64,000 nucleotides of DNA from IMG/VR virus record IMGVR_UViG_3300045961_000282, positions 124,001 to 188,000 of that record; one strand, 5' to 3'. Numbering within the stretch: position 1 is the first letter of the stretch; each line of letters begins with the position of its first letter. The notes beneath the pieces are model-generated. The model had not been told where the DNA came from. It was given only the letters and a program-made list of their open reading frames with translations, and did not search any database. Below, in pieces: positions 20,700 to 63,934 of this stretch. The translations under genes were made by a program, and so were the position numbers.

Positions 20700-21300
20700 C
20701 AACCTATCCACCCATGCCCCCTCCGGTGCTACGCAGCGTATCGGTGCGGGCACCCCCGCTAGGGGGTGGGTGGACCCGAGGGTTCGACAGCGACGAGGCG
20801 GCACCGCGGGTCCCGCGGGTTCCGCGGGTTCGACAGGCGGGGCGGGACTCTTCCCGGGGGCGGATACGTGGCAAAGGCGAAATCGCAGATTTCGGCTGAT
20901 GGTGGAGCCGTTCCGCAGGAACGGATACGTTACGTAGCAGGACTTGAATTTTTTGATAGGTGGGGAGGGGGGACCCCCTAGGTATCCCACCGCCCCCCCA
21001 AACGTTTCCTGAAAGTGCCGGGGGGGTTCGGTCCAACGGTGCGTTTCGGTCCAACGGTGGCAACGGTGCAACGGCCCCCACCGACCCCGGTCGCGCGCAC
21101 GGGAGGCGGGGGGATCGTTTCGGTTCGAGGGTTTCGGACGGTTCCGGTCCCCATCGGCCCAACGGGACAACCGGACGTCAATCGTGTTCGTCGAATCACG
21201 TCGGGGCCAATGGATGCATGGCCCCCAAGCCAAGGGGCAGGCAAGGGGGGCCTCAGGGGGGCGAGGGAGCCTAGGGGCAGGCACAGGGGCTGGGCAGGAC
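20700..21300. other. non-coding repeat-rich region; candidate packaging, terminus or origin site
   Basis: No credible ORF; ccgcgggtt x3, caacggt x4, G/C runs and a prominent AATTTTTT tract; lies near the gene strand switch. Confidence 0.4.
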
Positions 21301-21350
21301 AAGCAAAAGGCCCCTAGGACCTGTGGGGTCCTAGGGGCCTCTGCTGGGGG

Positions 21351-21506
21351 CTACCAGTCACTCTGGGGGGCGTTGGGGCTGCCCAGAACCCAGAACGTGG
21401 CTTCGCGATCACTCATGCCTGCCCTGCGCGCCCTGCGAATCGCGAACAAGTCGCGCCAGCGCACGTGGGGCCAGACCTCGCCAGTCGCGCTGTTGATGAT
21501 CTCCAT
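21351..21506 (-). CDS. 51-aa ORF in a class-II leader cassette (not in the ORF track)
   Basis: TATAGT -10, TGAGCAGGGGAGAGTCCCC leader, AAGGAG RBS, terminator at 21308-21340. Confidence 0.65.
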   Translation of the reverse strand: MEIINSATGEVWPHVRWRDLFAIRRARRAGMSDREATFWVLGSPNAPQSDW

Positions 21507-21729
21507 GGGGGCTATCTCCTTTGCGTGGGGGGTCAGGGGACTCTCCCCTGCTCACCTAGATAACTATACATGATTGGACTAGCAAAGGCTACCTTGGCAG
21601 GGGGCTGGGAGCCTGCGCCCCCACAGGAGTGGTGCTCACCTGAGGCAGGTTTGACACGTAACAATATCTAGTGCTAAGGTTGTACCAACAGCCCGGGGAA
21701 AGGCCCCGGGGACCTGAAAGGAAACACTC

Positions 21730-22056
21730 ATGGACTTCCTCGTCACCATCCTCGCGATCGTCGTTCTGTTCAAGGTTCTGGCGTGGATGTTCGACAAGGT
21801 GCTTGGCCCCTTCCTGCTGGCCATTCCGATTGGCATCGTGATCTACCCGTTCGTGCTGCTCTGGCAGTTCAGCCCCGTGCTGTTCGTGATCCTCGTTGTG
21901 GTCGTGCCCGCGCTGGTCGCCAAGCCCGCGTGGAACGCCTACAAGGAGAACCGCGAGATCAAGGCGCAGGCCAAGGCCATCGCATGGCGGCGCATGATGG
22001 AGAAGCATCAGGAGACCGTCCGCGAACTGGAGAGCAAGGGCATCCAGTTCAAGTGA
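21730..22056 (+). CDS. membrane protein
   Basis: TTGACA/TAAGGT promoter, GAAAGGA RBS, hydrophobic N-terminal two-thirds. Confidence 0.75.
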   Translation: MDFLVTILAIVVLFKVLAWMFDKVLGPFLLAIPIGIVIYPFVLLWQFSPVLFVILVVVVPALVAKPAWNAYKENREIKAQAKAIAWRRMMEKHQETVRELESKGIQFK

Positions 22057-22064
22057 TGCACCAA

Positions 22065-22103
22065 CAGAACCCCCACCGTCCACGGTCGACGGTGGGGGTT
22101 CTG
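22065..22103. terminator. intrinsic terminator hairpin
   Basis: cagaacccccaccgtc / gacggtgggggttctg perfect 16-bp stem. Confidence 0.8.
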
Positions 22104-22134
22104 CCGTCTCCACCGCGCTTGCTATGGTTCCCCC

Positions 22135-22635
22135 ATGAGCGACCTTCCCGTGACCCCGTACCCCGACCCGACCGGCATCAACACGGCGGGGTGGTCGGGA
22201 AGCGAGACCTCGCATGAGGCGGCATTGCATGCCGTGGTTTCCGGCGATGACCGTCGGGTGCAGGCCCGGGCCCTTCGCATGCTGGCCGCGGCCGGGCCCG
22301 ATGGGCTGACCTCGAAGGAGTTCGGCATCGCCACGGGCATCCATCACGGTCGCTCGTCCGGCGCGATGAGCGTGCTGCATCAGGCCGGACTGGTCGCCCG
22401 GCTCAGGGATCGCCGTGGCCGCTATGAGATCTACGTGCTGCCCGATGAGGTGCGAGGCCGCAAGGTGTCGACCCGGCGGCACAACAAACCCAAGAGCGCC
22501 GCGGACTACAAGCGGGGATGGGATGAAGGTCGCGCCGAACTGCTGTCGATCCTCGCCGGGATGTCTCAGGAGGAGCGGGACTTCATCATCGAGCGGGCCG
22601 CGGCGCTGCATGACTCCCAGCCGCCGCTGTTCTGA
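22135..22635 (+). CDS. winged-helix DNA-binding protein
   Basis: GLTSKEFGIATGIHHGRSSGAMSVLHQAG HTH-wing; leaderless TATGGT promoter. Confidence 0.7.
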   Translation: MSDLPVTPYPDPTGINTAGWSGSETSHEAALHAVVSGDDRRVQARALRMLAAAGPDGLTSKEFGIATGIHHGRSSGAMSVLHQAGLVARLRDRRGRYEIYVLPDEVRGRKVSTRRHNKPKSAADYKRGWDEGRAELLSILAGMSQEERDFIIERAAALHDSQPPLF

Positions 22636-22716
22636 GCGTTTTGATTCTGCGCACCGCTAGTGCTATGCTTGATCCATGAGCGAGGGAGAGTCCCCCGCCT
22701 AGCGAAAGGGAACCCG

Positions 22717-22876: not shown

Positions 22877-23794
22877 ATGACCAACGACACCCCCCGCAAG
22901 GCGCCCAAGATTGCCGCGGCGCGCGAGATTCTCTGGAACGCGGGATACAGCGGCCTGACGTGGCGCGACTACGCCGATGCGACCGGCGCCCACCATGGTG
23001 CGGCCTCCGGGATGCTGTCCCGGCTGCATCGCGATGGCGATGCCCTGCGGCTGGCCGAGAAGCGGGGCGCGGATTCGGTCTACGTCGCGCCGGAGTTCCG
23101 AATCAACCGGGATATTGTTCCGCCGAAGAAGCGCGCCGCGGAGCCGATCGCTCCCCTCCCCGTGGCTTCCGAGACTCCCCCGGCCATCGACATGGACGCC
23201 GTGTGGCGCGATGCCTACGCCGAGGGCGTGGCCGCCGGTCGCGCGCACGAGCGGACGATGGCCGAGAACGCCCGGGCTGAGCACGATGAGGCGATCCGGC
23301 TGGCCGGGTTCGCCGAGGGCGTGGCGCAGGGGGTGGCCGACCTCGAGGCCGCCCGAAGCGCGGCGTTCGCCGACGGGGTGGCCAAGGGCCGAGCCGACGC
23401 CCCGCCAACCGAGGATGCCGAGGCGGCCCGCCGGGAAGGCTTCGAGGCCGGTCGCGCGCAGGCCGAGGCCGAGTGGCAGGCCGGGTATGACGAGGGCGTC
23501 AAGGTCGGCGGCGACATCGCAATCGCGGAGATGAAGCAGCGGATGGTCGACGCCGGGGGCGAGCCGTACCTCAAGGGCCGCGCCGTGGGGCGCAAGGAGG
23601 GCGAGGAGGCGCTTCGGCGCCATGCGACCAAGGTGGCTGCCGAGATCGCCCGGGCCATCCGGGCCAACGGGTCTCCGGTCAAGACGCACCACAGCACGTG
23701 CTGGATGCAGCACCCGGAGTGCGCCGTGAAGGCCGTGGTGCAGGGCATCGGGGTGACGCCGGATCGGTTCCGCTCCGAGGTCAATGTCGCCTGA
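22877..23794 (+). CDS. winged-helix protein (paralog of 22135) with AxxxG coiled-coil repeats
   Basis: GLTWRDYADATGAHHGAASGMLSRLHRDG; repeated YAEG/FAEG/FEAG. Confidence 0.7.
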   Translation: MTNDTPRKAPKIAAAREILWNAGYSGLTWRDYADATGAHHGAASGMLSRLHRDGDALRLAEKRGADSVYVAPEFRINRDIVPPKKRAAEPIAPLPVASETPPAIDMDAVWRDAYAEGVAAGRAHERTMAENARAEHDEAIRLAGFAEGVAQGVADLEAARSAAFADGVAKGRADAPPTEDAEAARREGFEAGRAQAEAEWQAGYDEGVKVGGDIAIAEMKQRMVDAGGEPYLKGRAVGRKEGEEALRRHATKVAAEIARAIRANGSPVKTHHSTCWMQHPECAVKAVVQGIGVTPDRFRSEVNVA

Positions 23795-23854
23795 CTTGAC
23801 GCCGTTCCAGGAGTCGTGCTAAGGTTGTACCAACACCACGACGAAGGGAACATC

Positions 23855-24038: not shown

Positions 24039-24389
24039 TCAGGCCTCGACGTGCTCCGGGGCCGGGGGGTTGTTCACGATGTAGGCATCCATGACGTGCT
24101 TCGGGATGCGGCCCCGATCCGGGACCGGCAGGCCGTTGGCCCGTGCCCACTGCCGGACCTCGCTGCCACCCTTCGAGCGGCGCTTGCCCGTGCGTGCGCG
24201 ACCGGCGATCGGGGTGCTGGTGGTCGGGCGGCCCGCGGCGATGAACGGGGCCAGCGCGTTGGCCAGCATCTCGCGGTTCGCCGCGCCGAGGTCGATCTCG
24301 TAAGACTTCCCGTCAAGGGCGAACGTCACGAGACGAACGCCGTCCTCGCTTCCATCGAGGTCGTCGATCTTCACCTGTCGCATTGCCAT
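24039..24389 (-). CDS. lsr2: Lsr2 nucleoid-associated protein / xenogeneic silencer
   Basis: DDLDG, FALDGKSYEIDL, VRQWARANG..V.DRGRIP. Confidence 0.95.
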   Translation of the reverse strand: MAMRQVKIDDLDGSEDGVRLVTFALDGKSYEIDLGAANREMLANALAPFIAAGRPTTSTPIAGRARTGKRRSKGGSEVRQWARANGLPVPDRGRIPKHVMDAYIVNNPPAPEHVEA

Positions 24390-24884
24390 CGTCATTCTCC
24401 TGTCGCTTTTTGGTGGGTGGTGGAGAAACAATATCGGACCCCACTGACATCGCGCGAGATGACATCACCACTTCAGCAGGATTCCGAGGAACAGGAACAC
24501 CCCCCATCCGAGCAGGAACACGGTCAGCAGGGCCATGTCGTCCTCGTGGTCGCGCTTCATGGACCGGAACCCTACACGCGCTGCTATGCTGGTGCCTTAA
24601 TTTGATTGGTTGGGCGAACCGGGACAGGCTTGGCTCCGCGTGTAGGAAGCCGGAGCGCTTTGCAAGGTCAGAGCATTTGACGTTTGACCTAGATTCCCGC
24701 CGCTCCCCGGGGAGCCAAGGCCCCGGCGCCTCATTCGAACGAGGTTGCCGGGGCCGCCTCATGCGCGCGACCGGCCCCGGTGGGGCAAACAAGCATTGGA
24801 CACCGATCCCGAACCCTCCCTAGAGTGAGTGCTGCCCGCGCTGGAACGCGGGCAGCACGAGCCCACCTAGGCAGAGGTGAACTG

Positions 24885-25587: not shown

Positions 25588-27432
25588 TTACCGCCTGCCC
25601 TTGTACGGAGAACGTTTTCCGAGGTTCGCTGCCCCTAGTGGCGGCAACCGATAGGCAGACATTGAGCGGGCACGCAGATTAGAATTGACGGCAAATGAAG
25701 CGCCCTTGACCTTGGTGGTGAGGGCCAGCGACGCCCAGACCATCGCGTCGAGACGTCCCGGAGATACCTTGGATTCCGCGGGGACCCATGAGGTGATCTC
25801 GGATTCCAACAGCGGGTGGTAGTTCAGCATATGCAGGCGGCCCTGCTCAGCAAGGGCCGCCACCGGCTCGGCGCGGGTTGCCTTGCCTGCTCGGGCGTGC
25901 ACGATGTAGACCGGCACGTTGGCATTCACCTGTCCGATGGCCATGCGGACCAGTTCGCCGCCCTGATTCCCCTCGGCCACCACTGGGCCGCCCCACTTGA
26001 TCGCCATGTCCACGACCCGCTTGGCCCAGACCGCCGGGCTGCCCAGCACGGTCGCATCCTCCACGACGTAGAGTTGGCGGCGGTAGAAGTCCCGCTCGGC
26101 GGTTCCCTTCACCACCACGATGCCCGCCTCGTCCTTGGGGCGCTCAGCAACACTGGGATCGACCCCGATCACCGTGTGCATCTTGATCCCGCCCGGCAGT
26201 TCGGTCACCCGTGCCGCATCGAGGTCGGACTGCATGAACAGCGCGCCCTCGATGTCGTGCAGCATCTCGCCCATCAGTTCCTGCTGGCCGATCCGGGTCC
26301 CTTCGTACAGGCCGAGGATCGTGGCGCGGAAGGACTGCGCAAGGTTGGCGAGGTTGTCATATGTCGTTCCACGGGTGATGACGATGCCGAACTCAGGATT
26401 CTCGGATTCCTCCAGCAGTTGGAACATCGAGGGAACGCGTCGCGGCGTGGTCGTGGCAACCATACGCGGCATGTCGCCATCAACCGGAAGTCGTAGACCC
26501 AGCCGCAAGTTGGCGAACGCCGTCAGACCATCGGCGCCGGAGACCTGCGGGTAGGAAGCAAACTCGTCGCAGTTGTGAATCAAGACTCCGGCGGCATAGA
26601 ACTCCGGCGCTCCGTTGATCGTGAGGTCATAGACATTGGCTCGACCCGCCGGGCGCACGGAAGCAACAGGAAACAGGGTGGTGCTCGAGTCTGTGCTGAG
26701 GCGGACGTGAACCATATCCCCGGCCTCGAGGTCGGCGGCCTGAACCCACGTGTCCCGCCTCGATTCGCTCGCCACCAACACGAGGTGATCGGGGGTGCAG
26801 CGCAATGTCGTCGGCCCGGCCTCGATCTCCACCACCTCGCGGTCGGTTCCCGTGCGCTGTGCGCGCGCGACCGGCCAGAAGCCGGAACGGGTGAGCACTT
26901 TCATCCCCGGCTGGATCTGTTCGATGGGCAGCGGCCCCAGCGAGGTGAGTACCGGCTCCCCTTCGGCTACGCACCACGCGGTGTCGAACTGGGGACCACG
27001 CAACTGGTCCGGCTCGTCGGCGGAGAAGGCCAATGCATACGCGCCGTTCGGCCACGACACCCGGCGCTTGGATGGCTCCCAGACGGGTACCTCGCCGGGT
27101 CGGGAGGACTCGATGATCCCCGACGGGCCGTTGACCATGACATCGCGGACGTCAGCAGCGGTGCGGCCCAGCAGCGCGATTCGCCTGCCGTGGCCATCGC
27201 GGACCCGTTCATTGATCCACTCAGCGGCGGTTCTCGTTTTCCCCCAACCCCGCCCTGCCATCGCCAGCCAAAGCACCCAGTCTCCGGACGGAGGGGTCTG
27301 GGAGGGCCTCCTCCAGAAGGCCCAATCGTGTATCAGCGACTCGGCATCAACCCCTTCAAGGGTCGCCTCGCGCTCCTCAGGGGGAAGCAGGGCGATGCGT
27401 TGGGCCATCGAGAGTTCGTGGCCGTAGGTCAT
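25588..27432 (-). CDS. terL: terminase large subunit (intein-containing)
   Basis: Walker A AGRGWGKT; LRGPQF..W-[intein]-CDEFA Walker B; TTTP; nuclease GVDPS, DEAGIVV and DAMVWA; leaderless TATGGT promoter. Confidence 0.92.
   Translation of the reverse strand: MTYGHELSMAQRIALLPPEEREATLEGVDAESLIHDWAFWRRPSQTPPSGDWVLWLAMAGRGWGKTRTAAEWINERVRDGHGRRIALLGRTAADVRDVMVNGPSGIIESSRPGEVPVWEPSKRRVSWPNGAYALAFSADEPDQLRGPQFDTAWCVAEGEPVLTSLGPLPIEQIQPGMKVLTRSGFWPVARAQRTGTDREVVEIEAGPTTLRCTPDHLVLVASESRRDTWVQAADLEAGDMVHVRLSTDSSTTLFPVASVRPAGRANVYDLTINGAPEFYAAGVLIHNCDEFASYPQVSGADGLTAFANLRLGLRLPVDGDMPRMVATTTPRRVPSMFQLLEESENPEFGIVITRGTTYDNLANLAQSFRATILGLYEGTRIGQQELMGEMLHDIEGALFMQSDLDAARVTELPGGIKMHTVIGVDPSVAERPKDEAGIVVVKGTAERDFYRRQLYVVEDATVLGSPAVWAKRVVDMAIKWGGPVVAEGNQGGELVRMAIGQVNANVPVYIVHARAGKATRAEPVAALAEQGRLHMLNYHPLLESEITSWVPAESKVSPGRLDAMVWASLALTTKVKGASFAVNSNLRARSMSAYRLPPLGAANLGKRSPYKGRR
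26572..26973 (-). mobile_element. 134-aa mini-intein (no homing endonuclease)
   Basis: Starts CVAEG; block B CTPDH; ends VYDLT...IHN followed by Cys+1. Confidence 0.92.
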
Positions 27433-27504: not shown

Positions 27505-28464
27505 TCACCAGTCCCGCACCGGCACCATCGCTCGCCCGATCAAGTAGGTCCCCGCCTCGGTGTGGATGTCGACGTACTCCTTGGGTTCGATGTCGGCGCT
27601 GGCATGGACGTAGTAGGCCGGGCGCACCTCGTTCGGGCGCTTGTTCGGCGCCGCCGCGCGGGCCACGGCGAGGTCGATGTCCCGCAGGTACATCCGCACC
27701 GGGTCGATCAGCACGCGGGTCAACGACTGGGTTGAGTTGTGCACCGCCGAGGACCGCCAGCCCAGTGAGGTCGCCACCTCGGCCAGTGCGTTGACGATCT
27801 CAGGGCGCCGGGAGCGGATCACGACGTGGCGGCGCAGGCCGCGGTTGAACACACCCTTGCCATCGAGCGCCCCGGCCATCAAGTCACGGCGCACCTCCAC
27901 AGGCGCCCGCCGGTACGCGAGCGCGACCGGCTCGGAGAAGGCGTCGATGCGATGCAGCCGCTCCAGCAGCCCATCGACGTAGAGGTAGGCGTGCTTGCCG
28001 TGGGCAGTGCGGCGGCGAACCTTCAGGCCGCGGGCCTCGATCATCTCGGCGGCCCGGTCGGCGAGATTGGCCGGAACCGACACCGCATCCTCGATGCCGG
28101 TGGTCCGCCACAAACCATACGTCCACGGATCGAGCGGCGGCCCGGCCTCGAGCCAGTCCTCGGGGATCTCCCCGATGAGCGCGATCCGCTCGGTCACCAC
28201 CGGGTCGCGGCGCTCGGCCTCGCCGGGCCACGCCTTCATCGACACCCACGCAGTTCCCAGCACGAGGTCGTGGTCGGTCGAGCAGCGGATCGGCGGGCCG
28301 GAGATCCGCAGTTCGGTGGCTCGGGGCGGGGTCTCGCGGGCTACGCGCGCGACCGGGGTCGGCTTGCCGGAGGAGTCATAGAGCAGGTCGCCGGGAGCCG
28401 CGCGCCACGCCTCGATCCATCCGGTCGGGGAGACCAGCGGGGTCTCGGGATGGATGCTCGGCAT
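27505..28464 (-). CDS. free-standing intein-like Hint + degenerate LAGLIDADG protein without exteins
   Basis: Block A SIHPETPLVSPTGW..GDLLYD..GKPT; block B STDH; LDPWTYGLW and RRDLMAGALDGKG; TYLIGRAMVP block F/G; own leaderless promoter. Confidence 0.75.
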   Translation of the reverse strand: MPSIHPETPLVSPTGWIEAWRAAPGDLLYDSSGKPTPVARVARETPPRATELRISGPPIRCSTDHDLVLGTAWVSMKAWPGEAERRDPVVTERIALIGEIPEDWLEAGPPLDPWTYGLWRTTGIEDAVSVPANLADRAAEMIEARGLKVRRRTAHGKHAYLYVDGLLERLHRIDAFSEPVALAYRRAPVEVRRDLMAGALDGKGVFNRGLRRHVVIRSRRPEIVNALAEVATSLGWRSSAVHNSTQSLTRVLIDPVRMYLRDIDLAVARAAAPNKRPNEVRPAYYVHASADIEPKEYVDIHTEAGTYLIGRAMVPVRDW

Positions 28465-28998: not shown

Positions 28999-30042
28999 CT
29001 ACCGCCAGAACTCGGGCACGGAGTGGTCGTGGTCCGTGCGGCGACACCACGGCGACGCCTCGCGCCACTTGTGGGCGTAGGACAGCGGCTCGTCGGTGTA
29101 GTCGTCGTAGTCCATCCCTTGGTGCTCGCACCACGCTCGATGCGCCGCCCGCGTGCACTCGGGGCGGGTCCACTGGCCCAGCCCCCGCAGCAGCGCCCGC
29201 ACCTCACGTGCGCGCGACCGGTGGGCTGGGGTGAACGTGCACGCCTCGACCACCAGTTCGTGGTGCATCGACCCCGGGATGGGCCGGGTGTCGGATTCCT
29301 CCCAGTTATAGCAGTCCGGCGGCAGGGCGCCCTTGCGCCACATCGTCACCGCCGTCATCCGGCTCGGCCCCCACTCGTGGTGCAGCCGCATGAACAGGGC
29401 GTCCACCGCGTCGAACGTGTTGCGGTTGACCCACTTGTTCTCCTTGCGCGGGATGGTCATGCCCGCCCGCTCCTCGAGGATGTCCTCGGTCCAGCCCAGC
29501 GCCATCAGTGCGCGGACCTGCCACAGCGTCCACTCCGCCGGGAACCGCTTGGCGTCGCGAACCATAAGGGCCGGGTTGGACTTCACCTTCTCGACCGTCA
29601 GCAGCAGCGTGCGTTCCGTGCTGCGCGCGACGTTGACCCGGCCCGGCGTGAGCACGCGGTCCAGCGCCCGGCGCTCCATCCCGGAGATGGCCTCGATCTG
29701 GGTCCACCGCAGGCCCTGCCCCCGCAGCCACGTCAGGGCCTCGACCGACGTCGCTGCCGGAACCCGGTCGTAGTCGCTGGGTATCCCCGCCTTCAGGCGC
29801 GCCCGACGCGCTCGCCACGTTTCCGCGTGGGCGTCCTTGCAGGGGCGACAGCGGCAGCCAAGTGAGTAAGAACTCTGTGACGGTGCGCTACATGTAAAGT
29901 CTTCATCTGTGCTCAAAGTTCCCCAACCTACTTTCTCTGGTCTGAACTTGTGTACGCTATCGTTGCCGCTGTTCACAGTGAAACAGGAGGTCGGCCATGA
30001 GTTATCCATGCGAGGTCGAAGGTTGCCATCGGGGAGATGCAT
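28999..30042 (-). CDS. phage DNA-binding protein (GCRC..C zinc motif plus HTH-like segments); true start probably near 29.9 kb
   Basis: YSLGCRCRPCK, WTQIEAISG and QVRALMALGW pattern seen in actinophage proteins. Confidence 0.6.
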   Translation of the reverse strand: MHLPDGNLRPRMDNSWPTSCFTVNSGNDSVHKFRPEKVGWGTLSTDEDFTCSAPSQSSYSLGCRCRPCKDAHAETWRARRARLKAGIPSDYDRVPAATSVEALTWLRGQGLRWTQIEAISGMERRALDRVLTPGRVNVARSTERTLLLTVEKVKSNPALMVRDAKRFPAEWTLWQVRALMALGWTEDILEERAGMTIPRKENKWVNRNTFDAVDALFMRLHHEWGPSRMTAVTMWRKGALPPDCYNWEESDTRPIPGSMHHELVVEACTFTPAHRSRAREVRALLRGLGQWTRPECTRAAHRAWCEHQGMDYDDYTDEPLSYAHKWREASPWCRRTDHDHSVPEFWR

Positions 30043-30812
30043 CCCGCCTCAGGGGAACGGAGGGCCCCCGCTTGTGCACCACCCACAAGCGGCAAATCAA
30101 GACGCGGGGCGAGGTGTGGCTGGTGGAAAAGTGGGTGAAGCCGCCCACCTGCGAAGGACCGGAATGCGACCGGGAGCCGAGGTTGCGCATCAAGGAAAGC
30201 GGGATCTGGCTGTGCAACTCCCACCGAATGCAACTGGCGAACGGGAAGCCGCTGACTCCGATCGGATCGACAGTTCATCGCGCCCCTGCGCGACCGGAAC
30301 GCCTCGCCCGAGAGTCCGACAAGGATCTGGCCCTGCGGCAGATGGTGGTCACCCCCGAACTGATCGGGAGGTTCTGGAGCAAGGTGGACGTTCGGGGAAG
30401 GGATGAGTGCTGGGAATGGAAGGCGTCGTTGACGGCGAGCGGATATGGGCAGTTCAGCCTTCGCTTCAAAGGCAAGTCCGTTCCTGTACCCGCCCACCGC
30501 GTGGCCAGAAGGTTCACCGAGGACGTGTCGGGGAAATGGGTGCTCCACTCCTGCGACAACCCCCCGTGCGTGAATCCTCAACACCTGCGGGTGGGGACGT
30601 CGAGCGACAACAACTCGGACATGGTCAAACGTGATCGTCATGTCTACGGCTCACGCAATCCCGTGGCCAAGGTGTCCGAAGAGCAGGTCAGCGAGATCAA
30701 GGCGCGCATCCGTGCCGGAGAACAGTTCACGGTGATCGCCGAGGACTACCCGATCTCTGCAGCGGGAATCGGGCACATCGCCGCTGGTCGCTCGTGGCGC
30801 CACGTCGAGTGA
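29997..30812 (+). CDS. HNH homing-type endonuclease
   Basis: CEVEGC, RFWSKVD, VLHSCDNPPCVNPQHL..GT..DN, C-terminal HTH. Confidence 0.9.
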   Translation: MSYPCEVEGCHRGDASRLRGTEGPRLCTTHKRQIKTRGEVWLVEKWVKPPTCEGPECDREPRLRIKESGIWLCNSHRMQLANGKPLTPIGSTVHRAPARPERLARESDKDLALRQMVVTPELIGRFWSKVDVRGRDECWEWKASLTASGYGQFSLRFKGKSVPVPAHRVARRFTEDVSGKWVLHSCDNPPCVNPQHLRVGTSSDNNSDMVKRDRHVYGSRNPVAKVSEEQVSEIKARIRAGEQFTVIAEDYPISAAGIGHIAAGRSWRHVE

Positions 30813-31269: not shown

Positions 31270-31655
31270 CGCAGGGCAGTCCTCGGAAGTGCGTACACCT
31301 CGGATCCAGCGAGGAGCGTCCCGGCGTAGGCAACCGAGCGGGCGAGGATGTCGACCTCGTCGCGCAGCGATCCGACCGGGACGATGCGGTCGGTCAGGTG
31401 CCGATGCGCCATGTACGCGCGCGACCGGAGATCGGTGAGCAGCGAGGTCGGGTCGAACGGGCTGACCACGACCGCCCCGCCAAGGAGCACCACGACGTTC
31501 GACAGGGACTCATGGGCGATCTGTACCTGCTTGTGCGCTTCGGTCCAATCGGCCTCGTCACCGCGACGGGTGTAGGCGTTCAGCAGCGCTCCTGCCCCGC
31601 TCAGCCTGATCTCGGCGCGGGCCACCAGTTGCTCGATCTCGTCGCCGAGCCTCAT
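31266..31655 (-). CDS. hypothetical helical protein
   Basis: Overlap chain. Confidence 0.6.
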   Translation of the reverse strand: MRLGDEIEQLVARAEIRLSGAGALLNAYTRRGDEADWTEAHKQVQIAHESLSNVVVLLGGAVVVSPFDPTSLLTDLRSRAYMAHRHLTDRIVPVGSLRDEVDILARSVAYAGTLLAGSEVYALPRTALR

Positions 31656-32870: not shown

Positions 32871-33500
32871 CCCCAAAGCATAGCAGGCCGGTCGCGCGCA
32901 CCCGGGGGGCTCGAATCCACGACCCGACATGACAGAGGCCCCGAACCGCTTGACACGGGTCGGGGCCTCTGAAAAGGTTTGGTCCGTCTACGACAACCTC
33001 TGGGTCCCATGGTAATCCCGAACCGTGGCGCACGTCAAGCGTATTGACGCCCTGAGCGCGATGATCTGGGGCAGACCGTGGATATGCAGAGAGACCCTCC
33101 TGCATACAGGGAGCCGGGGATAGCAAGGGACCTCCGTCTTTGATCGGGAGGCCCCCCTACGAAATAGGGGGAGAAGGCCGTCAGAGGGCTAGTCAAGTTG
33201 AGCGTCCACCCGAGCGGGTTTCAGGAGCACCATCCCGCCACAGGCACAGAGGTGGGCGCATTGTTATGGCCCCGCAGGGATGCGGGATCCCAGCAGACCG
33301 TGCTGGCAGGGAGTAATCGCCCTGTCTATGGGCGCACCCGAGAGGTGCGTGCGGAACATCCGCCCTTGAGAATCCTCAGTTGCCGTACCCAGTTCAACGA
33401 TTGCTAATCCGCGAACTGGGTCGGCTCCTTGAGGATCGACCAGAACCCGCAGATCAAGGCCTCCCATGGGTTCCACAGATACAGGGAACTGCGGGACCCG

Positions 33501-33737: not shown

Positions 33738-33983
33738 GTGGAAATCTTATCAACCGACCCACCTCGCGTAGGGGCGCGCGACCGGAAAGCGATCGCTCGA
33801 GGTCCTCCGTCTTCACTGAACATCGGGATATGGTTCGCCCATGTCTTCTCCGCCGCGCCTGTCCATCCAGCGCCCCGGCCAGCAGCCGACCTACTGTGCT
33901 GGCTGCGGGAAGTGGCCAGCCGATCACAACGGCCCTGATGGCGCCCGCTACTGCGGCGACTGCCATAAGCGACTGTTCGGGTC

Positions 33984-34637
33984 CTAGGAGGAGAACAACT
34001 GCCCCTGCGCCACAGCCTCGCGGGCGGCGGCGTTGACCTGCTTGGCCAGTTTCCGCGCCTCAGCAGCCGTCAGGTGCAGCGGGCCGTTGGAGGTGTGCAC
34101 CAGAACCTCACCATCGACAGCAGCGGCGTGGAAGTGCGCCCGCCCCGGCAGCACCTCGAAGCAGGTGTCGGGGCCGTCGGGCACCACCACCCGCAGGCCG
34201 GTCGCGCGCAGGGCGGCGGCGATCTCCTCGGGGTCGCCGATCCAGTGCAGGAACAGCGAATCCACCAAGTCGTTGTAGACCGTCAGTCGGGCGGTGATGG
34301 AGTCGGCAGCAGCCTCCTCGGCGTGGGCCTCCATCCACTCCAGCGCCGCCTCATCGTCCTCGGGAAGGCGGTCCCAGAAGTCGTCGGTCTGCGGCATCGC
34401 ATCGGCGTCGCCCAAGAAGGCTCGGGAGTCCGTCTGCTCGTGCCACCAGATCGTCTTGAGGTCCTCGGGGAACTCGCCGTCGGCGCCGACCTGCCGGGCG
34501 ATCTCAGTCCATCCGCACGTCGCGCAGCACATCTCCCACGCGGCGGGCATGATCAGGTAGTCCCGAAGGGCCAGTTCCGCCAGCGCCGCGGCGAGACGCT
34601 CGCGGTCGTTCGCATGTTCGCGCGACCGGTTGCTCAT
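33984..34637 (-). CDS. hypothetical protein with a CCxxC motif (DUF6891-like)
   Basis: MCCATCG..WWHEQTD; leaderless TACCGT promoter. Confidence 0.6.
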   Translation of the reverse strand: MSNRSREHANDRERLAAALAELALRDYLIMPAAWEMCCATCGWTEIARQVGADGEFPEDLKTIWWHEQTDSRAFLGDADAMPQTDDFWDRLPEDDEAALEWMEAHAEEAAADSITARLTVYNDLVDSLFLHWIGDPEEIAAALRATGLRVVVPDGPDTCFEVLPGRAHFHAAAVDGEVLVHTSNGPLHLTAAEARKLAKQVNAAAREAVAQGQLFSS

Positions 34638-36320: not shown

Positions 36321-36527
36321 TCAACAATCCGATTCCGGCTCCTCGAGCCCCTTCTCAGGCGCGCGCGACCGGCGCCGATTCCACCAGAGACGGATCGGGA
36401 CGATGGCGAAAACGCCGATGGCTAGGGCGATCTCGGCCAGCAGCGACCACACAAGGGTTGCAAACTGATCTGGAGTCAGGGCCAAAGGAAAAGCCCCCTC
36501 GACCAGCAGGTCGAGGGGGCTTTCCAT
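36321..36527 (-). CDS. small membrane protein
   Basis: Hydrophobic helix; RBS GGAG. Confidence 0.5.
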   Translation of the reverse strand: MESPLDLLVEGAFPLALTPDQFATLVWSLLAEIALAIGVFAIVPIRLWWNRRRSRAPEKGLEEPESDC

Positions 36528-36868: not shown

Positions 36869-37528
36869 TGGGGTGCTCCTTCGTTGGTAGTGGTTGTTGT
36901 TTCACGCAATAGTAGCACCCCGCGCGAGGTCAGGACGAGGAGGCCCTCGCCGCCAACCGTGCCGCGCGCTCAGCCAACTGCGCCTCTCGAGCCGCCCGGC
37001 GCGTCTCGCGCTCCTTCTGCTCGCGCAGTGCGGCGGACATCGATGGGGACTTGGGATCCCACGAACGGACATTGGGAGAGGTGCTGACGGCCATGTTCGA
37101 CTCCGATGCGTGGAAGGTGGGGCGTCCCTGCGTCAGGTCAAGGATACGGATGTCGGGGACGCTGCACCCGGCGATTCCCTACCCTGCCGTGCATGAAGCC
37201 ACAGGATCTGGCCGCCGATGTCCTGTACCTGTCCCTTGCCGTCCCGGTCGCGCTCGCGATGCACGTGGCCATCGGCGCAGTGGAGGGGATCGAGTGGCTC
37301 AAGAGCCTGCGTCCCTGACTGCCGCCGGGGTCGGCGCGCTGGCCGGAGTGATCGCCGCCGCCCTCGCTGGGTACGTCGTGGCCGAGCGGGTGACGACGTG
37401 GATGAGTTCTGTCATGTCCCCGTCGCAGACTGGTTCCAGCACGGATTAGGTGATCCGCACTAGTTCGTGTAGTCTTATTCCTGTGAGCGAGGGAAGTGCC
37501 CCGCTCCTGATCCCTGAGGAGGGACCCC

Positions 37529-37801: not shown

Positions 37802-37886
37802 CCCCCCACGGCCCCCCGCTTCGGCGGGGGGCTTTCCCGTGCCCGCCTCGCGTGTGTGCGCGACCGGCGTTGCTAGGCTGCCGAGC

Positions 37887-49336: not shown

Positions 49337-49632
49337 GCCGCTCCATGCTGCTTGCCATGCTGATCGGCGCGCTTCTGGCCGTCACGGTCTCCATCGTGCT
49401 GGTGCGCGTCCTCGCGTAACGCGCGCGCGACCGGCGGCCCTCGAGGGTCCCGAGGATTTGGGGATCCCTAAACTCGACGAGTTCGAGGCTTCGTATGGTT
49501 CGCGCCGAGTTGTGTCATGCCCTCGATGCACACTGGTGGAACAACAGAACAGCGGGACGGTCGATTGGACTTGCATCACCCCATCCCGTAAACTAGTTGC
49601 TACAACAACCACCACAACAGAAAGGCGCTGAC

Positions 49633-51258: not shown

Positions 51259-51413
51259 CAGCATCTCCTTCGTGTGTGCGTGCACACTACACGCGCGCGC
51301 GACCGGCTCGAGCCGCCGCCGGAGCCTCACCAGACCTCGATTGGGTGGGTGTCCTAGCGGCGTGCTATGCTTTGCAGGCAACAACCACCAACACAACCTG
51401 AAAGGAGAACAAC

Positions 51414-54226: not shown

Positions 54227-54497
54227 CCTACCCCACGCCCCCGAAACCCCCCGGTTCCCCTGTGGAGCCGGGGGGTTTTGCGTGCTCGCCTCACGCGTAC
54301 GCGCGCGCGACCGGCAACCCTCGAGCGTTGATCGAGACTCCTCGAGACTCCTCCGGGAGGCCGTATGGTTCGCCGCCGGTGTTTGTGTCAGACCCCTGCC
54401 GCACACTGCCTGCACCAAACAGGATTTGGCGCAGGCAGGAAACTGCTGCTATGCTTGACCCACAACAGCACGACCACCACTACCGAAAGGACACACC

Positions 54498-57141: not shown

Positions 57142-57357
57142 TCCCCCGAACAAGAACCCCCGGCGTGCCCCTCGCGTCGGGGGTTCTTCGTGTGTACGCG
57201 CGCGCGACCGGCGGCTCGAGGTGAGGCTATGACTTTCTCGAGCCTCCTCCGGTGGGCCGTATGGTTCGCCCCGTTCCCTCGATTTGTTACGTTCCGAATC
57301 CACGTGCTATGCTTGGGGCAACACCGCACCACCACCACTACGACGAAAGGACTTCTC

Positions 57358-60834: not shown

Positions 60835-60884
60835 GTGTTATACACTTGGGCTACCAACATCACCACTACGAAAGGAGAACGACG

Positions 60885-62118: not shown

Positions 62119-62121
62119 GTC

Positions 62122-62317
62122 GTCGTGGTCCGCACGGGGCGCGCCTGACCCGGCGTCCGAGTACGGGAACTTCCATGCCTCGTCATGCCGCGCATGACGT
62201 GACGAGGTATCCCGTGCTCAACCTATCCGCCGGGCGAACGACGCCCTCGACGCCTCCCGTTGGACATGCGGGGCACGGCGGGGAAAGGGTGCATCCGGCC
62301 CCCGTGCGGACCACGAC
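62122..62317 (+). ncRNA. candidate structured RNA (18-bp terminal stem, two long internal arms, U-tract)
   Basis: gtcgtggtccgcacgggg / ccccgtgcggaccacgac perfect pairing; nested stems; followed by TTTT. Confidence 0.55.
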
Positions 62318-62385
62318 TTTTCTTGCACAGGATTCCTGTGCTAGGATTTGAATACAACCACCACAACGACACGAAAGGAATCACA

Positions 62386-62592
62386 ATGACCACCATGAAT
62401 GTGACCCGCGAGCCCCTGCTCACGAAGGCGGACCGCTGCGAGGCCTGTGCTGCCGCTGCGATGGTGCGCGTGCGCACCGAGAACCTCGGCGTCTGGCTGT
62501 TCTGCGGCTCGCACTGGGACCGCAGCAAGGACGCCCTGCCCGGCGTGGTGCACGTCCACGACGAGCGCAACCCCTTGGGGGTGCGGTCATGA
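62386..62592 (+). CDS. small actinobacterial zinc-binding protein (DUF7455-like)
   Basis: LTKADRCEACAAAAMVRV..LFCGSH. Confidence 0.7.
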   Translation: MTTMNVTREPLLTKADRCEACAAAAMVRVRTENLGVWLFCGSHWDRSKDALPGVVHVHDERNPLGVRS

Positions 62593-62942
62593 TCCCGTTC
62601 TCGGTCGCCCGCGGGGCGGCCCAGTTCGTCATCGACCTCGTTGTCGTGGCCAACGAACTGCGCAAGCAGGACAACGAGCCTGAGCACGTCCACAAGTCCC
62701 TGACCCGCCACGAGGCCGGGCGCATCGGGCTGGAGATGGTCATGGTCATGCGGCAGTCCCGCGAGAACCCGGGCACCTTCCAGCCCATGATGCAGGCCAT
62801 CATGGACGACCTCGACTGCACCGAGCAGATCGTGGACGTGGCCATGTCGCTGGCGGGCATGGTCGCGGTTCTGGCCAAGGATGAGGACATGACCCGGTTC
62901 GGCGAGTTCATCCTTCGCCACGAAGTGCAGGAGATGCCATGA
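62589..62942 (+). CDS. hypothetical protein
   Basis: ATGA overlaps. Confidence 0.65.
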   Translation: MIPFSVARGAAQFVIDLVVVANELRKQDNEPEHVHKSLTRHEAGRIGLEMVMVMRQSRENPGTFQPMMQAIMDDLDCTEQIVDVAMSLAGMVAVLAKDEDMTRFGEFILRHEVQEMP

Positions 62943-63409
62943 GCGAGCGGCCCACGGCGGTGCAGATGCTGGAGCCCGCGCGCATCACGCGCGAGCGGGT
63001 GGAGCACTTCGTGCCCCAGATCCTGTACGTCCCGCGCAACGGCAGGCCACAGTTCGTCGCCGCCGATGGTGAGGGCTCTGCGCCCGAGGCTGTCGGCGCG
63101 GTGCTGGCCCAAGTGCGTGCGGCGCACGGCCCCGCCGAGTGGATCGCGGTGACTGTCGATGCCTACGCCAAGAACTTCGCTGAGGACCCCGGCTTCATCG
63201 CGCGCGGCGAACTCAGCGAGGCGTTCGCCGAAGGTGACCCCGCGGTGGTCGAGCAGATGATCGTCATTCTGGTCGACCGCTATAAGGGGGTCGAGGTCGC
63301 CTCGCAGAACTACCGCTACCTGCCCTCCGAGGGCTGGGAGTGGAGTGAGCCGGACACGCGGGGCGAGTTCGATGGCGACCTCATGAAGACCATCAAGTTC
63401 TACATGTAG
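62939..63409 (+). CDS. hypothetical protein
   Basis: ATGA overlap; GC3 bias. Confidence 0.65.
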   Translation: MSERPTAVQMLEPARITRERVEHFVPQILYVPRNGRPQFVAADGEGSAPEAVGAVLAQVRAAHGPAEWIAVTVDAYAKNFAEDPGFIARGELSEAFAEGDPAVVEQMIVILVDRYKGVEVASQNYRYLPSEGWEWSEPDTRGEFDGDLMKTIKFYM

Positions 63410-63551
63410 ATATCCCGAAACGTCCGCGCCTCGCGCGGAGCGCGCTTGTGGTGGGCGCGCGAAGGCCCCGAGCCGGGTTGAGTTTTCCTTTCCTCCCCGG
63501 CCTCGGGGCCTTCCCATGTCTCACGCGCCTACGCGCGCGCGACCGGTGTAG

Positions 63552-63623
63552 AGGCGGAAAAGAGAGTCGAACTCTTGTATGCAGATTTGCAGTCTGCCGC
63601 CTGTGCCGCTCGGCCATTCCGCC
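63552..63623 (-). tRNA. trnC: tRNA-Cys(GCA), no encoded CCA
   Basis: GGCGGAA/TTCCGCC acceptor, U73, GCAGA-CTGCAAA-TCTGC, AAGAG-TTCGACT-CTCTT. Confidence 0.93.
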
Positions 63624-63934
63624 GCTGATCATGATAATGCTGCGCTACCACCACGCCCAAGCCGGTGAACGGTGATTCGTATCACGGAAGGAAAGCCTCG
63701 CCTGCGCGCGCGACCGGCCCCGGCGCGCGCGCTATCTCCCGAACCTTTGGCGAACCATACGAGATATGGTTTATGACCCTGACACCGGCGAGGCCCCCCC
63801 TGCTTCGCCGGACAGACCCCCACCTCGTCAGCGGAGAGACCCCCCTTCGTAACCATAGATTTGACATGTGTCAGGGCTTGGGCTTACTCTTGTGTCAACA
63901 ACGCAACACCACCACCAACCGAAAGGGGAACGAC

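What the first reader, a model, noticed from the sequence alone, without database searches (positions are those of the whole stretch)
21087..63717. A strand-polarised 11-mer CGCGCGACCGG occurs 22 times, ignoring gene direction
Seen: exact copies start at 21087(-), 24764, 26864, 28346, 29211, 31418, 32888(-), 33775, 34619, 36362, 39842, 40482, 43381, 45291, 46681(-), 47192, 49424, 51296, 54304, 57201, 63536 and 63707. One-mismatch TGCGCGACCGG copies occur at 24195, 30287 and 37857. A rough base-composition expectation is below 1 copy. Nineteen of 22 are on the plus strand, inside both plus- and minus-strand genes (including both intein sequences) and just after terminators. Many extend 5' into alternating purine-pyrimidine tracts (GTGTACGCGCGCG). 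I saw no exact copy in 1-21 kb. Inference: this is a genome-architecture signal, such as a KOPS/Chi-like, priming, packaging or ejection site, a stoperator-like repressor site or a Z-DNA-prone sink behind strong promoters. Its absence would mark the glycan island as a later acquisition or place it beyond a terminus.
Basis: partly seen in the sequence, partly recalled or inferred. Interest (0 to 1): 0.8.

Follow-up and report, generated by a model that had tools for sequence, protein, structure and literature searches.

The report
Oriented repeated control motif in phage
A 17-base asymmetric DNA word, an alternating pyrimidine-purine run ending in GCGCGACCGG, occurs 30 times in one 43-kb block of small, promoter-rich genes of an uncultivated 206-kb actinobacterial phage. 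It follows local transcription direction, so it is most likely a protein-binding stop or insulator site for transcription, not a genome-wide replication or packaging signal.

Summary
There are 25 exact CGCGCGACCGG copies (19 plus, 6 minus; three minus copies were missed). The conserved core is the 10-mer GCGCGACCGG, with 30 copies against about 1 expected.

Enrichment survives order 3-5 Markov and codon-aware nulls. The core is preceded by a strictly alternating pyrimidine/purine run, giving YRYRYRY-GCGCG-ACCGG.

The window is part of a 206-kb viral contig. Of the 110 kb I could read, 30 copies lie in 42.6 kb and 4 in the other 67.7 kb. That 42.6-kb block also holds nearly all sigma-A-type extended -10 promoters.

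The motif does not ignore gene direction. Thirteen of 14 intergenic copies point the same way as the downstream gene, mostly just after a terminator hairpin and upstream of a promoter cassette. Two sit inside promoters. Thirteen of 16 intragenic copies are antisense.

The same core is enriched in related metagenomic phages (15 copies in a 13-kb contig) and absent from more distant ones.

Best reading (about 45%): an orientation-dependent operator or "stoperator"-like roadblock bound by an unidentified protein. Rivals are site-specific nick sites, a phage-specific promoter and a protein-free Z-DNA element. Chi/KOPS, priming and packaging readings are disfavoured.

The parts
21087..21096 (-). 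Core copy. Intergenic, co-oriented with gene 20090-20686(-). Sits among GGTCCAACGG iterons at the left edge of the block.
23235..23244 (-). Core copy, antisense inside wHTH/coiled-coil gene 22877-23794(+).
23448..23457 (-). Core copy, antisense inside gene 22877-23794(+).
24196..24205 (+). Core copy (T at position -1), antisense inside the Lsr2 gene 24039-24395(-).
24765..24774 (+). Core copy between promoter 24582 and the HNH gene, whose likely start is 24886. Co-oriented.
26865..26874 (+). Core copy, antisense in the terminase large-subunit gene, at the start of its intein (PVAR).
27921..27930 (+). Core copy (A at position -1), antisense in Hint-domain gene 27505-28464(-).
28347..28356 (+). 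Core copy, antisense, 108 nt into gene 27505-28464(-) and 340 nt upstream of the co-oriented promoter at 28687. Same offset in the L138 ortholog.
29212..29221 (+). Core copy, antisense in gene 28999-29679(-).
30288..30297 (+). Core copy (T at position -1), sense, inside HNH endonuclease gene 30072-30812(+).
31419..31428 (+). Core copy, antisense in gene 31266-31655(-).
32888..32897 (-). Core copy 2 nt upstream of the extended -10 TGCTATGCT of leaderless gene 32487-32870(-). The core lies at about -27 to -18, an operator-like position.
33776..33785 (+). Core copy, intergenic, followed by TCGAG and ATATGGTTCG. The only intergenic copy not co-oriented with the next called gene.
34198..34207 (-). 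Core copy, sense, inside DUF6891 gene 33984-34637(-). An exception to the antisense rule.
34620..34629 (+). Core copy in the first 8 nt of the DUF6891 gene, antisense, about 125 nt upstream of the divergent WhiB gene. Positionally conserved in L140 (site 5500).
36363..36372 (+). Core copy, antisense in small gene 36321-36527(-).
37244..37253 (-). Core copy (A at position -1), antisense in 37193-37318(+), upstream of divergent gene 36930-37094(-).
37858..37867 (+). Core copy (T at position -1), after a terminator hairpin and 3 nt upstream of TGCTAGGCT, the -10 of leaderless gene 37887-38117(+).
39843..39852 (+). Core copy, sense, inside HNH_3 gene 39538-40029(+), 170 nt upstream of the promoter at 40012-40041.
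40483..40492 (+). Core copy in an intergenic cassette: terminator, motif, TCGAG/TCGAC, CGTATGGTTCG, promoter.
43382..43391 (+). Core copy in an intergenic cassette, 55 nt after gene 42580-43326.
45292..45301 (+). Core copy, antisense in gene 45080-45361(-).
46681..46690 (-). Core copy in a minus-strand cassette: terminator of 46741-47088(-), motif, promoter at 46524(-), gene 45967-46479(-).
47193..47202 (+). Core copy at a divergent junction, co-oriented with gene 47368-47601(+).
49425..49434 (+). Core copy in an intergenic cassette.
51297..51306 (+). Core copy 67 nt upstream of promoter 51363. Overlaps the 5' end of the divergent DUF5679 gene.
54305..54314 (+). Core copy after the terminator of the MmeI-like gene. 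Followed by three TCGAG repeats at 10-11 nt spacing, then CGTATGGTTCG, then promoter 54447.
57202..57211 (+). Core copy after terminator 57169-57183, 103 nt upstream of promoter 57305.
63537..63546 (+). Core copy after a terminator, 4 nt from the 3' end of tRNA-Cys(-).
63708..63717 (+). Rightmost core copy of the block, co-oriented with gene 63935(+).

Best explanation
The element is an asymmetric duplex-DNA site of about 17 bp: a 12-nt alternating pyrimidine-purine run ending in GCGCG, followed by ACCGG. It belongs to the transcription-control apparatus of the block that carries the sigma-A-type promoters, which I read as the phage's early region.

I propose that a sequence-specific DNA-binding protein, not yet identified and probably phage-encoded, binds it and stops or insulates transcription in one direction.
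- Between genes, the site sits just past the upstream terminator and ahead of the next promoter cassette, pointing with transcription. There it would catch read-through and shield the next promoter.
- At two leaderless genes it lies within the promoter and would act as an operator.
- Inside genes it is tolerated mainly in the antisense orientation, where it would stop antisense or convergent transcription.

Shown: the enrichment, the extended logo, the confinement to one block, the orientation rules, and conservation in relatives. Inferred: protein binding, the polar block, and that this block is transcribed early by host RNA polymerase.
For: Enrichment. There are 30 core copies against about 1 expected under Markov, codon-aware and shuffle nulls. 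Intragenic copies use all three reading frames, so selection acts on the DNA, not on a peptide.

Distribution. Thirty copies lie in 42.6 kb and 4 in the other 67.7 kb read from the contig. Eighteen of 20 extended -10 promoter matches fall in that same block. All 18 matches within the window are intergenic.

Orientation. Thirteen of 14 intergenic copies are co-oriented with the downstream gene, including the minus-strand cassettes at 32888 and 46681. Eleven of the 14 follow the 3' end of a co-oriented gene, usually after a hairpin. Adding relatives gives about 20 of 22.

Promoter overlap. At 32888 and 37858 the core lies 2-3 nt upstream of the extended -10 of leaderless genes, at about -29 to -18.

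Intragenic bias. Thirteen copies are antisense and 3 sense, whereas codon shuffling predicts more sense than antisense (0.37 against 0.21). Two of the three sense copies are inside HNH endonuclease genes.

Conservation. L140 (terminase 73% identical) has 15 copies in 13 kb with the same terminator-motif-promoter layout. L138 has 3 copies in 3.2 kb. L137 and L144 have 1 each. More distant L139 and L149 are not enriched. The copy upstream of WhiB is positionally conserved in L140, and the copy in the Hint gene is conserved in L138.

Precedent. Cluster A mycobacteriophage repressors bind more than 20 asymmetric 13-mers as monomers, at promoters and in intergenic spaces. Site orientation there correlates with transcription, and reversing a site abolishes repression (PMC9283540, read).
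Against: No binding protein was identified. No relative of a Cluster A repressor was found. The one candidate I modelled (42580-43326) has no significant structural match, and no L5-type repressor is among its hits.

In L5 the sites point with transcription throughout, whereas here most intragenic copies are antisense. In relative L140 the intragenic antisense bias is weak (about 4 antisense against 4-5 sense).

Almost all copies match the core exactly and near-miss variants are few. That pattern is at least as typical of an enzyme recognition site, such as a nickase, as of an operator.

No lysogeny genes were seen, so a repressor would have to act in lytic timing. No transcript data exist: no RNA run was listed.
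Confidence: 0.45

Rival explanations
1. The motif is the recognition site of a phage nickase. Packaged DNA would carry localized single-strand interruptions at these sites, as in T5, phiKMV-like phages and Pseudomonas phage tf.
For: The tf paper (PMC3517423, read) reports exact consensus words (tf 5'-TACT/RTGMC-3', 14 sites). It reports very few one-substitution variants in the genome, an uneven distribution (11 of 14 nicks in one half), and the same consensus shared by relatives. It gives the T5 nick consensus as R/GCGCRGG, which also contains GCGC.

Here the core is exact in 30 of 30 copies and near-miss variants are few. The copies are confined to one block. The block carries at least four HNH endonuclease genes.
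Against: In the known cases all sites lie on one strand. Here only 23 of 30 do, and only 9 of 15 in L140. Orientation switches with local gene direction. The close tie to terminator-promoter cassettes and the two promoter-embedded copies are not expected for nick sites. No read-level data were available: the only run is stored as contigs.
Confidence: 0.17
2. The motif is a promoter, or the core of one, for a phage-encoded or phage-modified RNA polymerase. It would drive a second (middle) wave of transcription from just upstream of the sigma-A promoters and produce antisense RNAs over the minus-strand genes.
For: It is a contiguous, highly conserved, asymmetric block of about 20 bp. It is co-oriented with downstream genes in 13 of 14 intergenic cases and sits immediately after terminators. 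This layout resembles single-block phage promoters such as those of T7, and early transcripts antisense to late genes are known in T4; both comparisons are from my own knowledge.
Against: Distance to the start codon varies from 17 to 400 nt, and complete sigma-A-type promoters lie in between. The sequence is extremely GC-rich with no meltable AT patch. No RNA polymerase or sigma gene was found in the 110 kb sampled, and the 3976-aa protein shows only a DnaQ-like exonuclease match. A promoter gives no reason for intragenic copies to be mainly antisense.
Confidence: 0.13
3. The element works without a dedicated protein. The alternating tract flips to Z-DNA under the negative supercoiling generated behind strong promoters, absorbing torsion or blocking polymerases.
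For: The R/Y alternation is conserved at positions -1 to -7 in 23-29 of 30 copies, and also in relatives where the bases themselves differ. Together with GCGCG this gives about 12 nt, roughly one Z-DNA turn. Fourteen of the 25 alternating tracts of 12 nt or more in the window are at the motif. Copies sit upstream of strong promoters.
Against: A structural sink needs neither the invariant ACCGG nor a fixed orientation. Sixteen of 30 copies have tracts shorter than 12 nt. Alternating tracts as a whole are not more frequent than in shuffles (25 against 21 +/- 4).
Confidence: 0.08
4. The motif is a genome-architecture signal read along the DNA: Chi-like protection from exonuclease, KOPS-like translocase guidance, lagging-strand priming, or a packaging or ejection signal.
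For: There is an overall strand bias of 23 of 30 (19 of 25 for the 11-mer). The three leftmost copies are minus and most of the rest plus, as if diverging from about 24 kb. Spacing within 21-57 kb is more even than random (CV 0.62, P about 0.004, from a cut chosen after seeing the data).
Against: The motif is confined to 42.6 kb of a 206-kb contig, with 4 copies in the other 67.7 kb read. Orientation flips locally with divergent genes in the window and in L140. The motif is 17 nt long with structure-like flanks, unlike 5-8 nt Chi or KOPS words. Over the whole block the spacing is not significantly regular (P = 0.24).
Confidence: 0.06

Closest known systems
Stoperators and operators of Cluster A mycobacteriophages (L5 gp71, TipsytheTRex repressor)
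   Same: Both are arrays of tens of copies of an asymmetric, highly conserved site of 13-17 bp in an actinobacteriophage. Copies occur in promoters and in intergenic spaces. Orientation is tied to the direction of transcription. In L5 the effect is orientation-dependent (PMC9283540, read).
   Different: The sequences are unrelated (GGTGGMTGTCAAG, from my own knowledge, against YRYRYRYGCGCGACCGG). No gp71-like repressor or lysogeny module was found. Here the sites are confined to one 43-kb block of a 206-kb genome, most intragenic copies are antisense, and half of the site is defined by R/Y alternation rather than by specific bases.
Localized single-strand interruption (nick) motifs of T5, phiKMV-like phages and phage tf
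   Same: Both show an exact consensus word, few near-miss variants, an uneven distribution along the genome, and a consensus shared by related phages (PMC3517423, read).
   Different: Known nick motifs lie strictly on one strand and have no reported tie to terminator-promoter cassettes. Physical nicks could not be tested here.
KorB operator (OB) sites of plasmid RK2
   Same: A single conserved operator word is placed at very different distances from promoters: next to them, up to a few hundred bp away, or far from any promoter (from my own knowledge, not tested here).
   Different: OB is a palindrome bound by a ParB-type dimer. The motif here is asymmetric and orientation-coupled.
Termination motifs that are rarer on the sense strand and enriched antisense or between genes (yeast Nrd1/Nab3 sites, the mammalian U1-polyA axis)
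   Same: The distribution logic is the same: a signal that is rarer on the sense strand of genes and common antisense and between genes polices unwanted transcription (from my own knowledge).
   Different: Those signals are short RNA motifs in eukaryotes. Whether the element here acts in DNA or in RNA is unknown.

Membership tests
Cluster A stoperator / immunity-repressor system | Many copies of one asymmetric site of 13 bp or similar length spread over the phage genome | tested here: met
   There are 30 copies of an asymmetric element of about 17 bp. They are restricted to one 42.6-kb block.
Cluster A stoperator / immunity-repressor system | Site orientation correlates with the direction of transcription | tested here: inconclusive
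   Intergenic copies: 13 of 14 are co-oriented. Intragenic copies: 13 of 16 are antisense, the opposite of the L5 pattern.
Cluster A stoperator / immunity-repressor system | Some copies overlap promoters and act as operators | tested here: met
   At 32888(-) and 37858(+) the core lies 2-3 nt upstream of an extended -10. This is position only; function was not tested.
Cluster A stoperator / immunity-repressor system | A gp71-type repressor (HTH plus stoperator domain) is encoded by the phage | tested here: not met
   No such protein appears in Pfam, PHROG or PDB searches of the candidates. The model of 42580-43326 has no significant PDB match. Only 110 of 206 kb was examined.
Cluster A stoperator / immunity-repressor system | Site consensus GGTGGMTGTCAAG (from my own knowledge) | tested here: not met
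   The consensus here is YRYRYRYGCGCGACCGG.
Phage localized nick (sci) motifs | All sites lie on one DNA strand | tested here: not met
   In the window 23 copies are plus and 7 minus. In L140 the split is 6 and 9.
Phage localized nick (sci) motifs | Physical single-strand breaks at the motif in virion DNA | not testable with these tools
   The only run holding the sequence is kept as assembled contigs, with no read ends.
Phage localized nick (sci) motifs | Exact consensus with few one-substitution variants | tested here: met
   There are 30 exact cores. Few one-mismatch variants occur in the core (six, four outside the block), with no evident excess over chance.
Chi / KOPS-type polar genome words | Genome-wide distribution with polarity switching at an origin, terminus or DNA end | tested here: not met
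   The motif is limited to one block. Polarity flips with local divergent genes.
Single-block phage RNA polymerase promoters (T7 type) | Conserved block of about 20 bp, always co-oriented with and directly upstream of genes, plus a phage RNA polymerase gene | tested here: inconclusive
   A conserved block and intergenic co-orientation are present. However, 13 copies are antisense in genes, distances to genes vary from 17 to 400 nt, and no polymerase gene was found in the 110 kb sampled.
Z-DNA-forming tracts | Alternating purine-pyrimidine run of about 12 bp or more, with no orientation | tested here: inconclusive
   The mean tract is 11.2 nt and 14 of 30 are 12 nt or longer. The element also carries an invariant asymmetric ACCGG and a fixed orientation. 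Z-DNA formation itself is not testable here.

The most novel reading that the evidence does not exclude
The element is a new type of orientation-dependent transcription insulator. In this reading a phage protein reads a one-turn Z-DNA-prone tract together with an ACCGG anchor, effectively a B-Z junction. Negative supercoiling behind the strong early promoters would then switch the site on and block read-through and antisense transcription in one direction.
Probability: 0.1. Interest if true: 0.85.

Novelty: new variant of a known kind. Interest (0 to 1): 0.55.

Why it matters
Arrays of asymmetric, orientation-dependent sites that control phage transcription have so far been worked out mainly for Cluster A mycobacteriophages. 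This would be an independent example, unrelated in sequence, in an uncultivated clade of very large actinobacterial phages. It may act in lytic timing rather than in lysogeny.

Half of the recognition element is conserved as purine/pyrimidine alternation rather than as specific bases. That points to shape or Z-DNA-type readout, which is rare in bacterial gene control.

If the site turns out to be a directional stop, a compact 17-bp element working in high-GC actinobacteria would also be a useful genetic part. If it turns out to be a nick site, it would extend the poorly understood T5/tf phenomenon to actinophages.

Tried and rejected
- Close relatives in deposited phage genomes: none. Only tRNA-sized matches were found.
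- Whole-collection scans for 15-17-mers of the motif: these returned only this contig plus single chance hits. Other loci with several core copies proved to be collagen-like coding repeats or chance.
- Hairpin-loop presentation of the motif, as in N4-type promoters or single-strand initiation sites: rejected. Constrained folding of 50 sites gave a mean z of -0.10, and only 4 sites lie in clear loops.
- N4-like virion RNA polymerase in the neighbouring 3976-aa protein: no support. There was only a DnaQ-like exonuclease match and no polymerase motifs.
- Link to the MmeI-family enzyme at 51704-54226: the single adenine sits in GCGCGAC, a format typical of that family (from my own knowledge). However, CGCGAC as such is neither avoided nor enriched (121 observed against 113-116 expected), so nothing could be concluded.
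- Repeat or MITE origin: rejected. Sequence around the copies is only 33% identical in the cassette alignment, and intragenic copies share no flanks.
- Rfam: only the two tRNAs were found.
- RNA runs: none was listed. Read laying on the only DNA run gave contigs, flat depth and no read ends.
- Candidate binders gave no decisive annotation. These were the wHTH paralogs 22135-22635 and 22877-23794, and the HTH plus homing-endonuclease-repeat protein 42580-43326.
- Searching IMG/VR for relatives of 42580-43326 found only short HTH matches.
- An analogous motif with a different sequence in the more distant relatives L139 and L149: none found.

Full report
**What is there**

A search for CGCGCGACCGG finds 25 exact copies, 19 on the plus strand and 6 on the minus strand. 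Dinucleotide shuffles give 0.35 on average and never more than 3. Three minus-strand copies were missed, at 23235, 23448 and 34198.

Five further sites differ only at the first base: T at 24195, 30287 and 37857, and A at 27920 and 37244(-). The invariant core is therefore the 10-mer GCGCGACCGG, with 30 copies. Few other one-mismatch variants occur (six, four of them outside the block), so sites are essentially all-or-none.

The enrichment is robust:
- Order 3-5 Markov models expect 1.0-1.6 copies of the 10-mer and 0.3-0.6 of the 11-mer.
- Inside genes of the 21-64 kb region, synonymous-codon resampling expects 1.2 copies and codon shuffling 0.6. Sixteen are observed, and the maximum in 1000 trials was 5.
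- The intragenic copies use all three reading frames (PVAR/L, GRA, RSR), so the DNA is under selection, not a peptide.

**The real extent of the motif**

I aligned all copies on the core. Positions -1 to -7 alternate strictly between pyrimidine and purine, in 23-29 of 30 copies at each position. C is favoured at -9 and at +10, and nothing else is conserved.

In the related contig L140 the bases in this flank differ (typically ACAT instead of GYGC), but the R/Y alternation is kept. The alternating run that ends at the core's fifth base averages 11.2 nt at motif sites and 5.8 nt at 259 control GCGCG[AG] sites. Fourteen of the window's 25 alternating runs of 12 nt or more are at the motif.

The element is thus YRYRYRY-GCGCG-ACCGG, about 17 bp and asymmetric. 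It is not generally presented in a hairpin loop (mean z -0.10 over 50 sites). It is not part of a longer repeat: flanks are 33% identical.

**Where the window comes from**

The window is positions 124001-188000 of a 206,257-bp metagenomic contig, IMGVR_UViG_3300045961_000282 = Ga0484968_0000006, from freshwater sediment. The contig has the following features:
- a terminase large subunit with an intein, HNH endonucleases, Lsr2, WhiB and two tRNAs;
- an MmeI-family enzyme;
- a neighbouring 3976-aa protein;
- a cslA/glxA/GH6/GH5 glycan gene set.

There is no close relative among deposited phages.

An independent assembly contig of 39.9 kb, at flat depth 20.7, spans window 11341-51242. The glycan island and the motif block are therefore physically joined.

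**Distribution along the contig**

I could read 110.3 kb of the contig (95,960-206,257). Thirty core copies lie in 42.6 kb (window 21087-63717) and only four in the other 67.7 kb. Two of those four are in the 3976-aa gene, one of them in a poor flank context.

The same block holds 18 of the 20 matches to the extended -10 promoter pattern TGYTAWDNT. All 18 matches of this pattern within the window lie between genes. Sigma-70-type promoter matches are about five times over expectation in 37.5-57.4 kb. I read this block as the region transcribed by host RNA polymerase, probably early; that timing is an inference.

**Anatomy of the intergenic copies**

Alignment of 14 intergenic copies shows a modular cassette:
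1. a GC-rich terminator hairpin;
2. 13-36 nt of C/T-rich sequence;
3. the motif;
4. TCGAG/TCGAC words, often as direct repeats 10-11 or 22 nt apart;
5. a second conserved word, CGTATGGTTCG;
6. a TTGAC-N17-TGCTATGCT promoter;
7. a CACCACCAC leader, a GAAAGGA ribosome-binding site and the start codon.

The distance from the motif to the -10 element varies from 2 to about 340 nt. The motif is therefore not a fixed promoter sub-element.

At 32888(-) and 37858(+) the core lies 2-3 nt upstream of the extended -10 of leaderless genes, at about -29 to -18. That is a classical operator position.

L140 and L144 show the same terminator-motif-promoter order.

**Orientation**

I used the public gene calls for the contig.

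| Class of copy | Count | Orientation |
|---|---|---|
| Intergenic | 14 | 13 point the same way as the downstream gene, including the minus-strand cassettes at 21087, 32888 and 46681 |
| Intergenic, after a co-oriented gene end | 11 of the 14 | follow the 3' end of a co-oriented upstream gene |
| Intragenic | 16 | 13 antisense, 3 sense |

Codon shuffling predicts more sense than antisense copies (0.37 against 0.21), so the antisense bias is not a codon effect.

Several antisense copies lie in the first 8-110 nt of a gene at a divergent junction, and so upstream of a co-oriented promoter or gene: 28347, 34620, 37244 and 51297.

Two of the three sense copies are inside HNH endonuclease genes (30288, 39843). 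A third HNH gene has a copy in its 5' leader (24765).

The overall plus-strand excess (23 of 30) is therefore largely a consequence of gene layout. Where the two rules disagree for intergenic copies, local gene direction wins three times out of four.

In L140 the intergenic rule holds (5 of 6). The intragenic antisense bias there is weak, about 4 against 4-5.

**Conservation**

| Relative | Terminase identity to window | Length | Core copies |
|---|---|---|---|
| L140 | 73% | 13.2 kb | 15 |
| L138 | not on contig (identified by a 47%-identical ortholog of gene 27505-28464) | 3.2 kb | 3 |
| L137 | 78% | 5.6 kb | 1 |
| L144 | 85% | 1.4 kb | 1 |
| L139 | 67% (GC 71%) | 17.6 kb | 2, near chance |
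| L149 | 66% (GC 58%) | 8.4 kb | 0 |

Sources. The element characterises one clade.

Positions mostly turn over, but two are conserved:
- The copy about 110-125 nt upstream of WhiB, at the 5' edge of the divergent DUF6891 gene, is shared by the window (34620) and L140 (5500).
- The copy 108 nt into the Hint-domain gene is shared by the window (28347) and L138 (2294). It encodes a conserved PVAR, and the closer relative L137 lacks it, so this one is weak evidence.

Copies 26865 and 28347 sit at homologous positions of two Hint domains and may share descent.

**Interpretation**

Four facts tie the element to transcription rather than to replication, recombination or packaging: confinement to the promoter-rich block, coupling of orientation to local transcription, placement between terminators and promoters, and two promoter-embedded copies.

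The closest worked-out system is the Cluster A mycobacteriophage repressor. It binds more than 20 asymmetric 13-mers as a monomer, at promoters and in intergenic spaces. Site orientation follows transcription, and repression is lost when a site is reversed (PMC9283540, read).

I therefore favour an orientation-dependent protein roadblock or operator. It would back up terminators, shield promoters from read-through and stop antisense transcription. I put this at about 0.45.

It is not a member of the L5 system. The sequences are unrelated, no gp71-like protein was found, and the intragenic orientation is opposite.

Candidate binders exist but none is supported by evidence:
- A 248-aa protein (42580-43326) has a sigma-70-region-4-like HTH. 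Sixteen of 35 members of its family match the 'homing endonuclease associated repeat' model PF18780. No nuclease domain was detected. The model has pLDDT 92.9 and no significant PDB match.
- Two paralogous wHTH proteins (22135-22635 and 22877-23794) have relatives encoded next to the terminase gene in L140 and L143.

**Rivals**

- *Nick sites.* The all-or-none exactness, the uneven distribution and the shared consensus among relatives match the nick motifs of phage tf, phiKMV-like phages and T5 (PMC3517423, read). Those motifs are strictly on one strand and are not tied to regulatory cassettes. Nicks could not be tested, because the one run is stored as contigs.
- *Phage-specific promoter.* This fits the intergenic orientation. 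It does not fit the GC content, the variable distances, the intervening complete promoters or the antisense excess.
- *Protein-free Z-DNA element.* This fits the R/Y conservation but not the invariant ACCGG or the orientation.
- *Chi/KOPS, priming, packaging.* These are disfavoured by the block-limited distribution and the local flips. Even spacing is significant only for a sub-range chosen after seeing the data.

**Verdict**

This is a real, strongly selected, lineage-conserved regulatory DNA element of a new sequence type. It is best filed as a new variant of the phage operator/stoperator kind. Its mechanism is unproven.

Noticed in passing
window 1576-12265: The phage carries a glycan gene set: GH5 cellulase, GH6, a GlxA-like radical copper oxidase, a CslA-like family 2 glycosyltransferase, PIG-L deacetylase, WbqC, UDP-glucose dehydrogenase and a second GT2. 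From my own knowledge, this resembles the Streptomyces cslA-glxA-cslZ hyphal-tip glycan locus. An independent assembly contig joins it to the rest of the phage.
   Followed up: partly
window 51704-54226 (+): An 840-aa MmeI-family restriction-modification or methyltransferase protein, with N-terminal, helicase-spacer and methyltransferase domains, lies in the middle of the motif block. The motif's only adenine lies in GCGCGAC, a format typical of MmeI-type sites (from my own knowledge). No link could be shown.
   Followed up: partly
window 40490-40545, 43390-43446, 49433-49503, 54313-54373, 57210-57269: TCGAG/TCGAC words follow the motif, often as direct repeats 10-11 or 22 nt apart, for example three in 54311-54340. 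They are followed by a second conserved word, CGTATGGTTCG. From my own knowledge, the repeat pattern recalls binding sites of SARP-type activators.
   Followed up: no
window 21672-57902 (18 sites, e.g. 51363, 54447, 57305): There is a family of strong sigma-A-type promoters with the extended -10 TGCTATGCT, all intergenic. Many feed a CACCACCAC leader and a GAAAGGA ribosome-binding site. Several drive leaderless genes, at 22120, 22661, 28471(-), 32877(-) and 38121.
   Followed up: partly
window 20686-21730: A region of about 1 kb with almost no coding capacity lies at the left edge of the motif block. It has four GGTCCAACGG-type iterons around the leftmost motif copy, G and C runs, an A/T patch and many inverted repeats. 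It is a candidate origin, packaging site or module boundary.
   Followed up: no
window 25588-27432 (-) and 27505-28464 (-): The terminase large subunit carries an intein. The adjacent 319-aa gene starts with a homologous Hint-like domain and may be a free-standing intein-like protein. Both carry the motif at the same PVAR position.
   Followed up: partly
L148 8762-20692 (contig about 108,008-119,938, left of the window): A 3976-aa Ala/Arg/Asp/Glu-rich protein has a DnaQ-like 3'-5' exonuclease segment at residues 810-902 and no other recognisable domain.
   Followed up: partly
window 24886-25586, 30072-30812, 39538-40029 (+); 44255-44962 (-); 257-709 (+): There are five HNH-type endonuclease genes. 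The three plus-strand ones inside the block each have a sense-oriented motif copy in or just before them, and these account for two of the three sense intragenic copies.
   Followed up: partly
window 23788-23844 and 50629-50685: A 57-nt direct repeat covers two promoter regions, apparently a duplicated promoter cassette. It was seen as a second placement of the Logan contig.
   Followed up: no
L140 (whole locus, 13.2 kb): The related contig carries a second over-represented word that the window lacks: the palindrome CTCAATGCATTGAG, with its central 10-mer CAATGCATTG counted six times over both strands. It looks like a classical dimer operator.
   Followed up: no
window 24039-24395 (-) and 34755-35156 (+): The phage encodes an Lsr2 (dimerisation plus DNA-binding domains) and a WhiB-family protein. 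Lsr2 relatives are encoded in L137 and L140, and WhiB relatives in L139 and L140.
   Followed up: no
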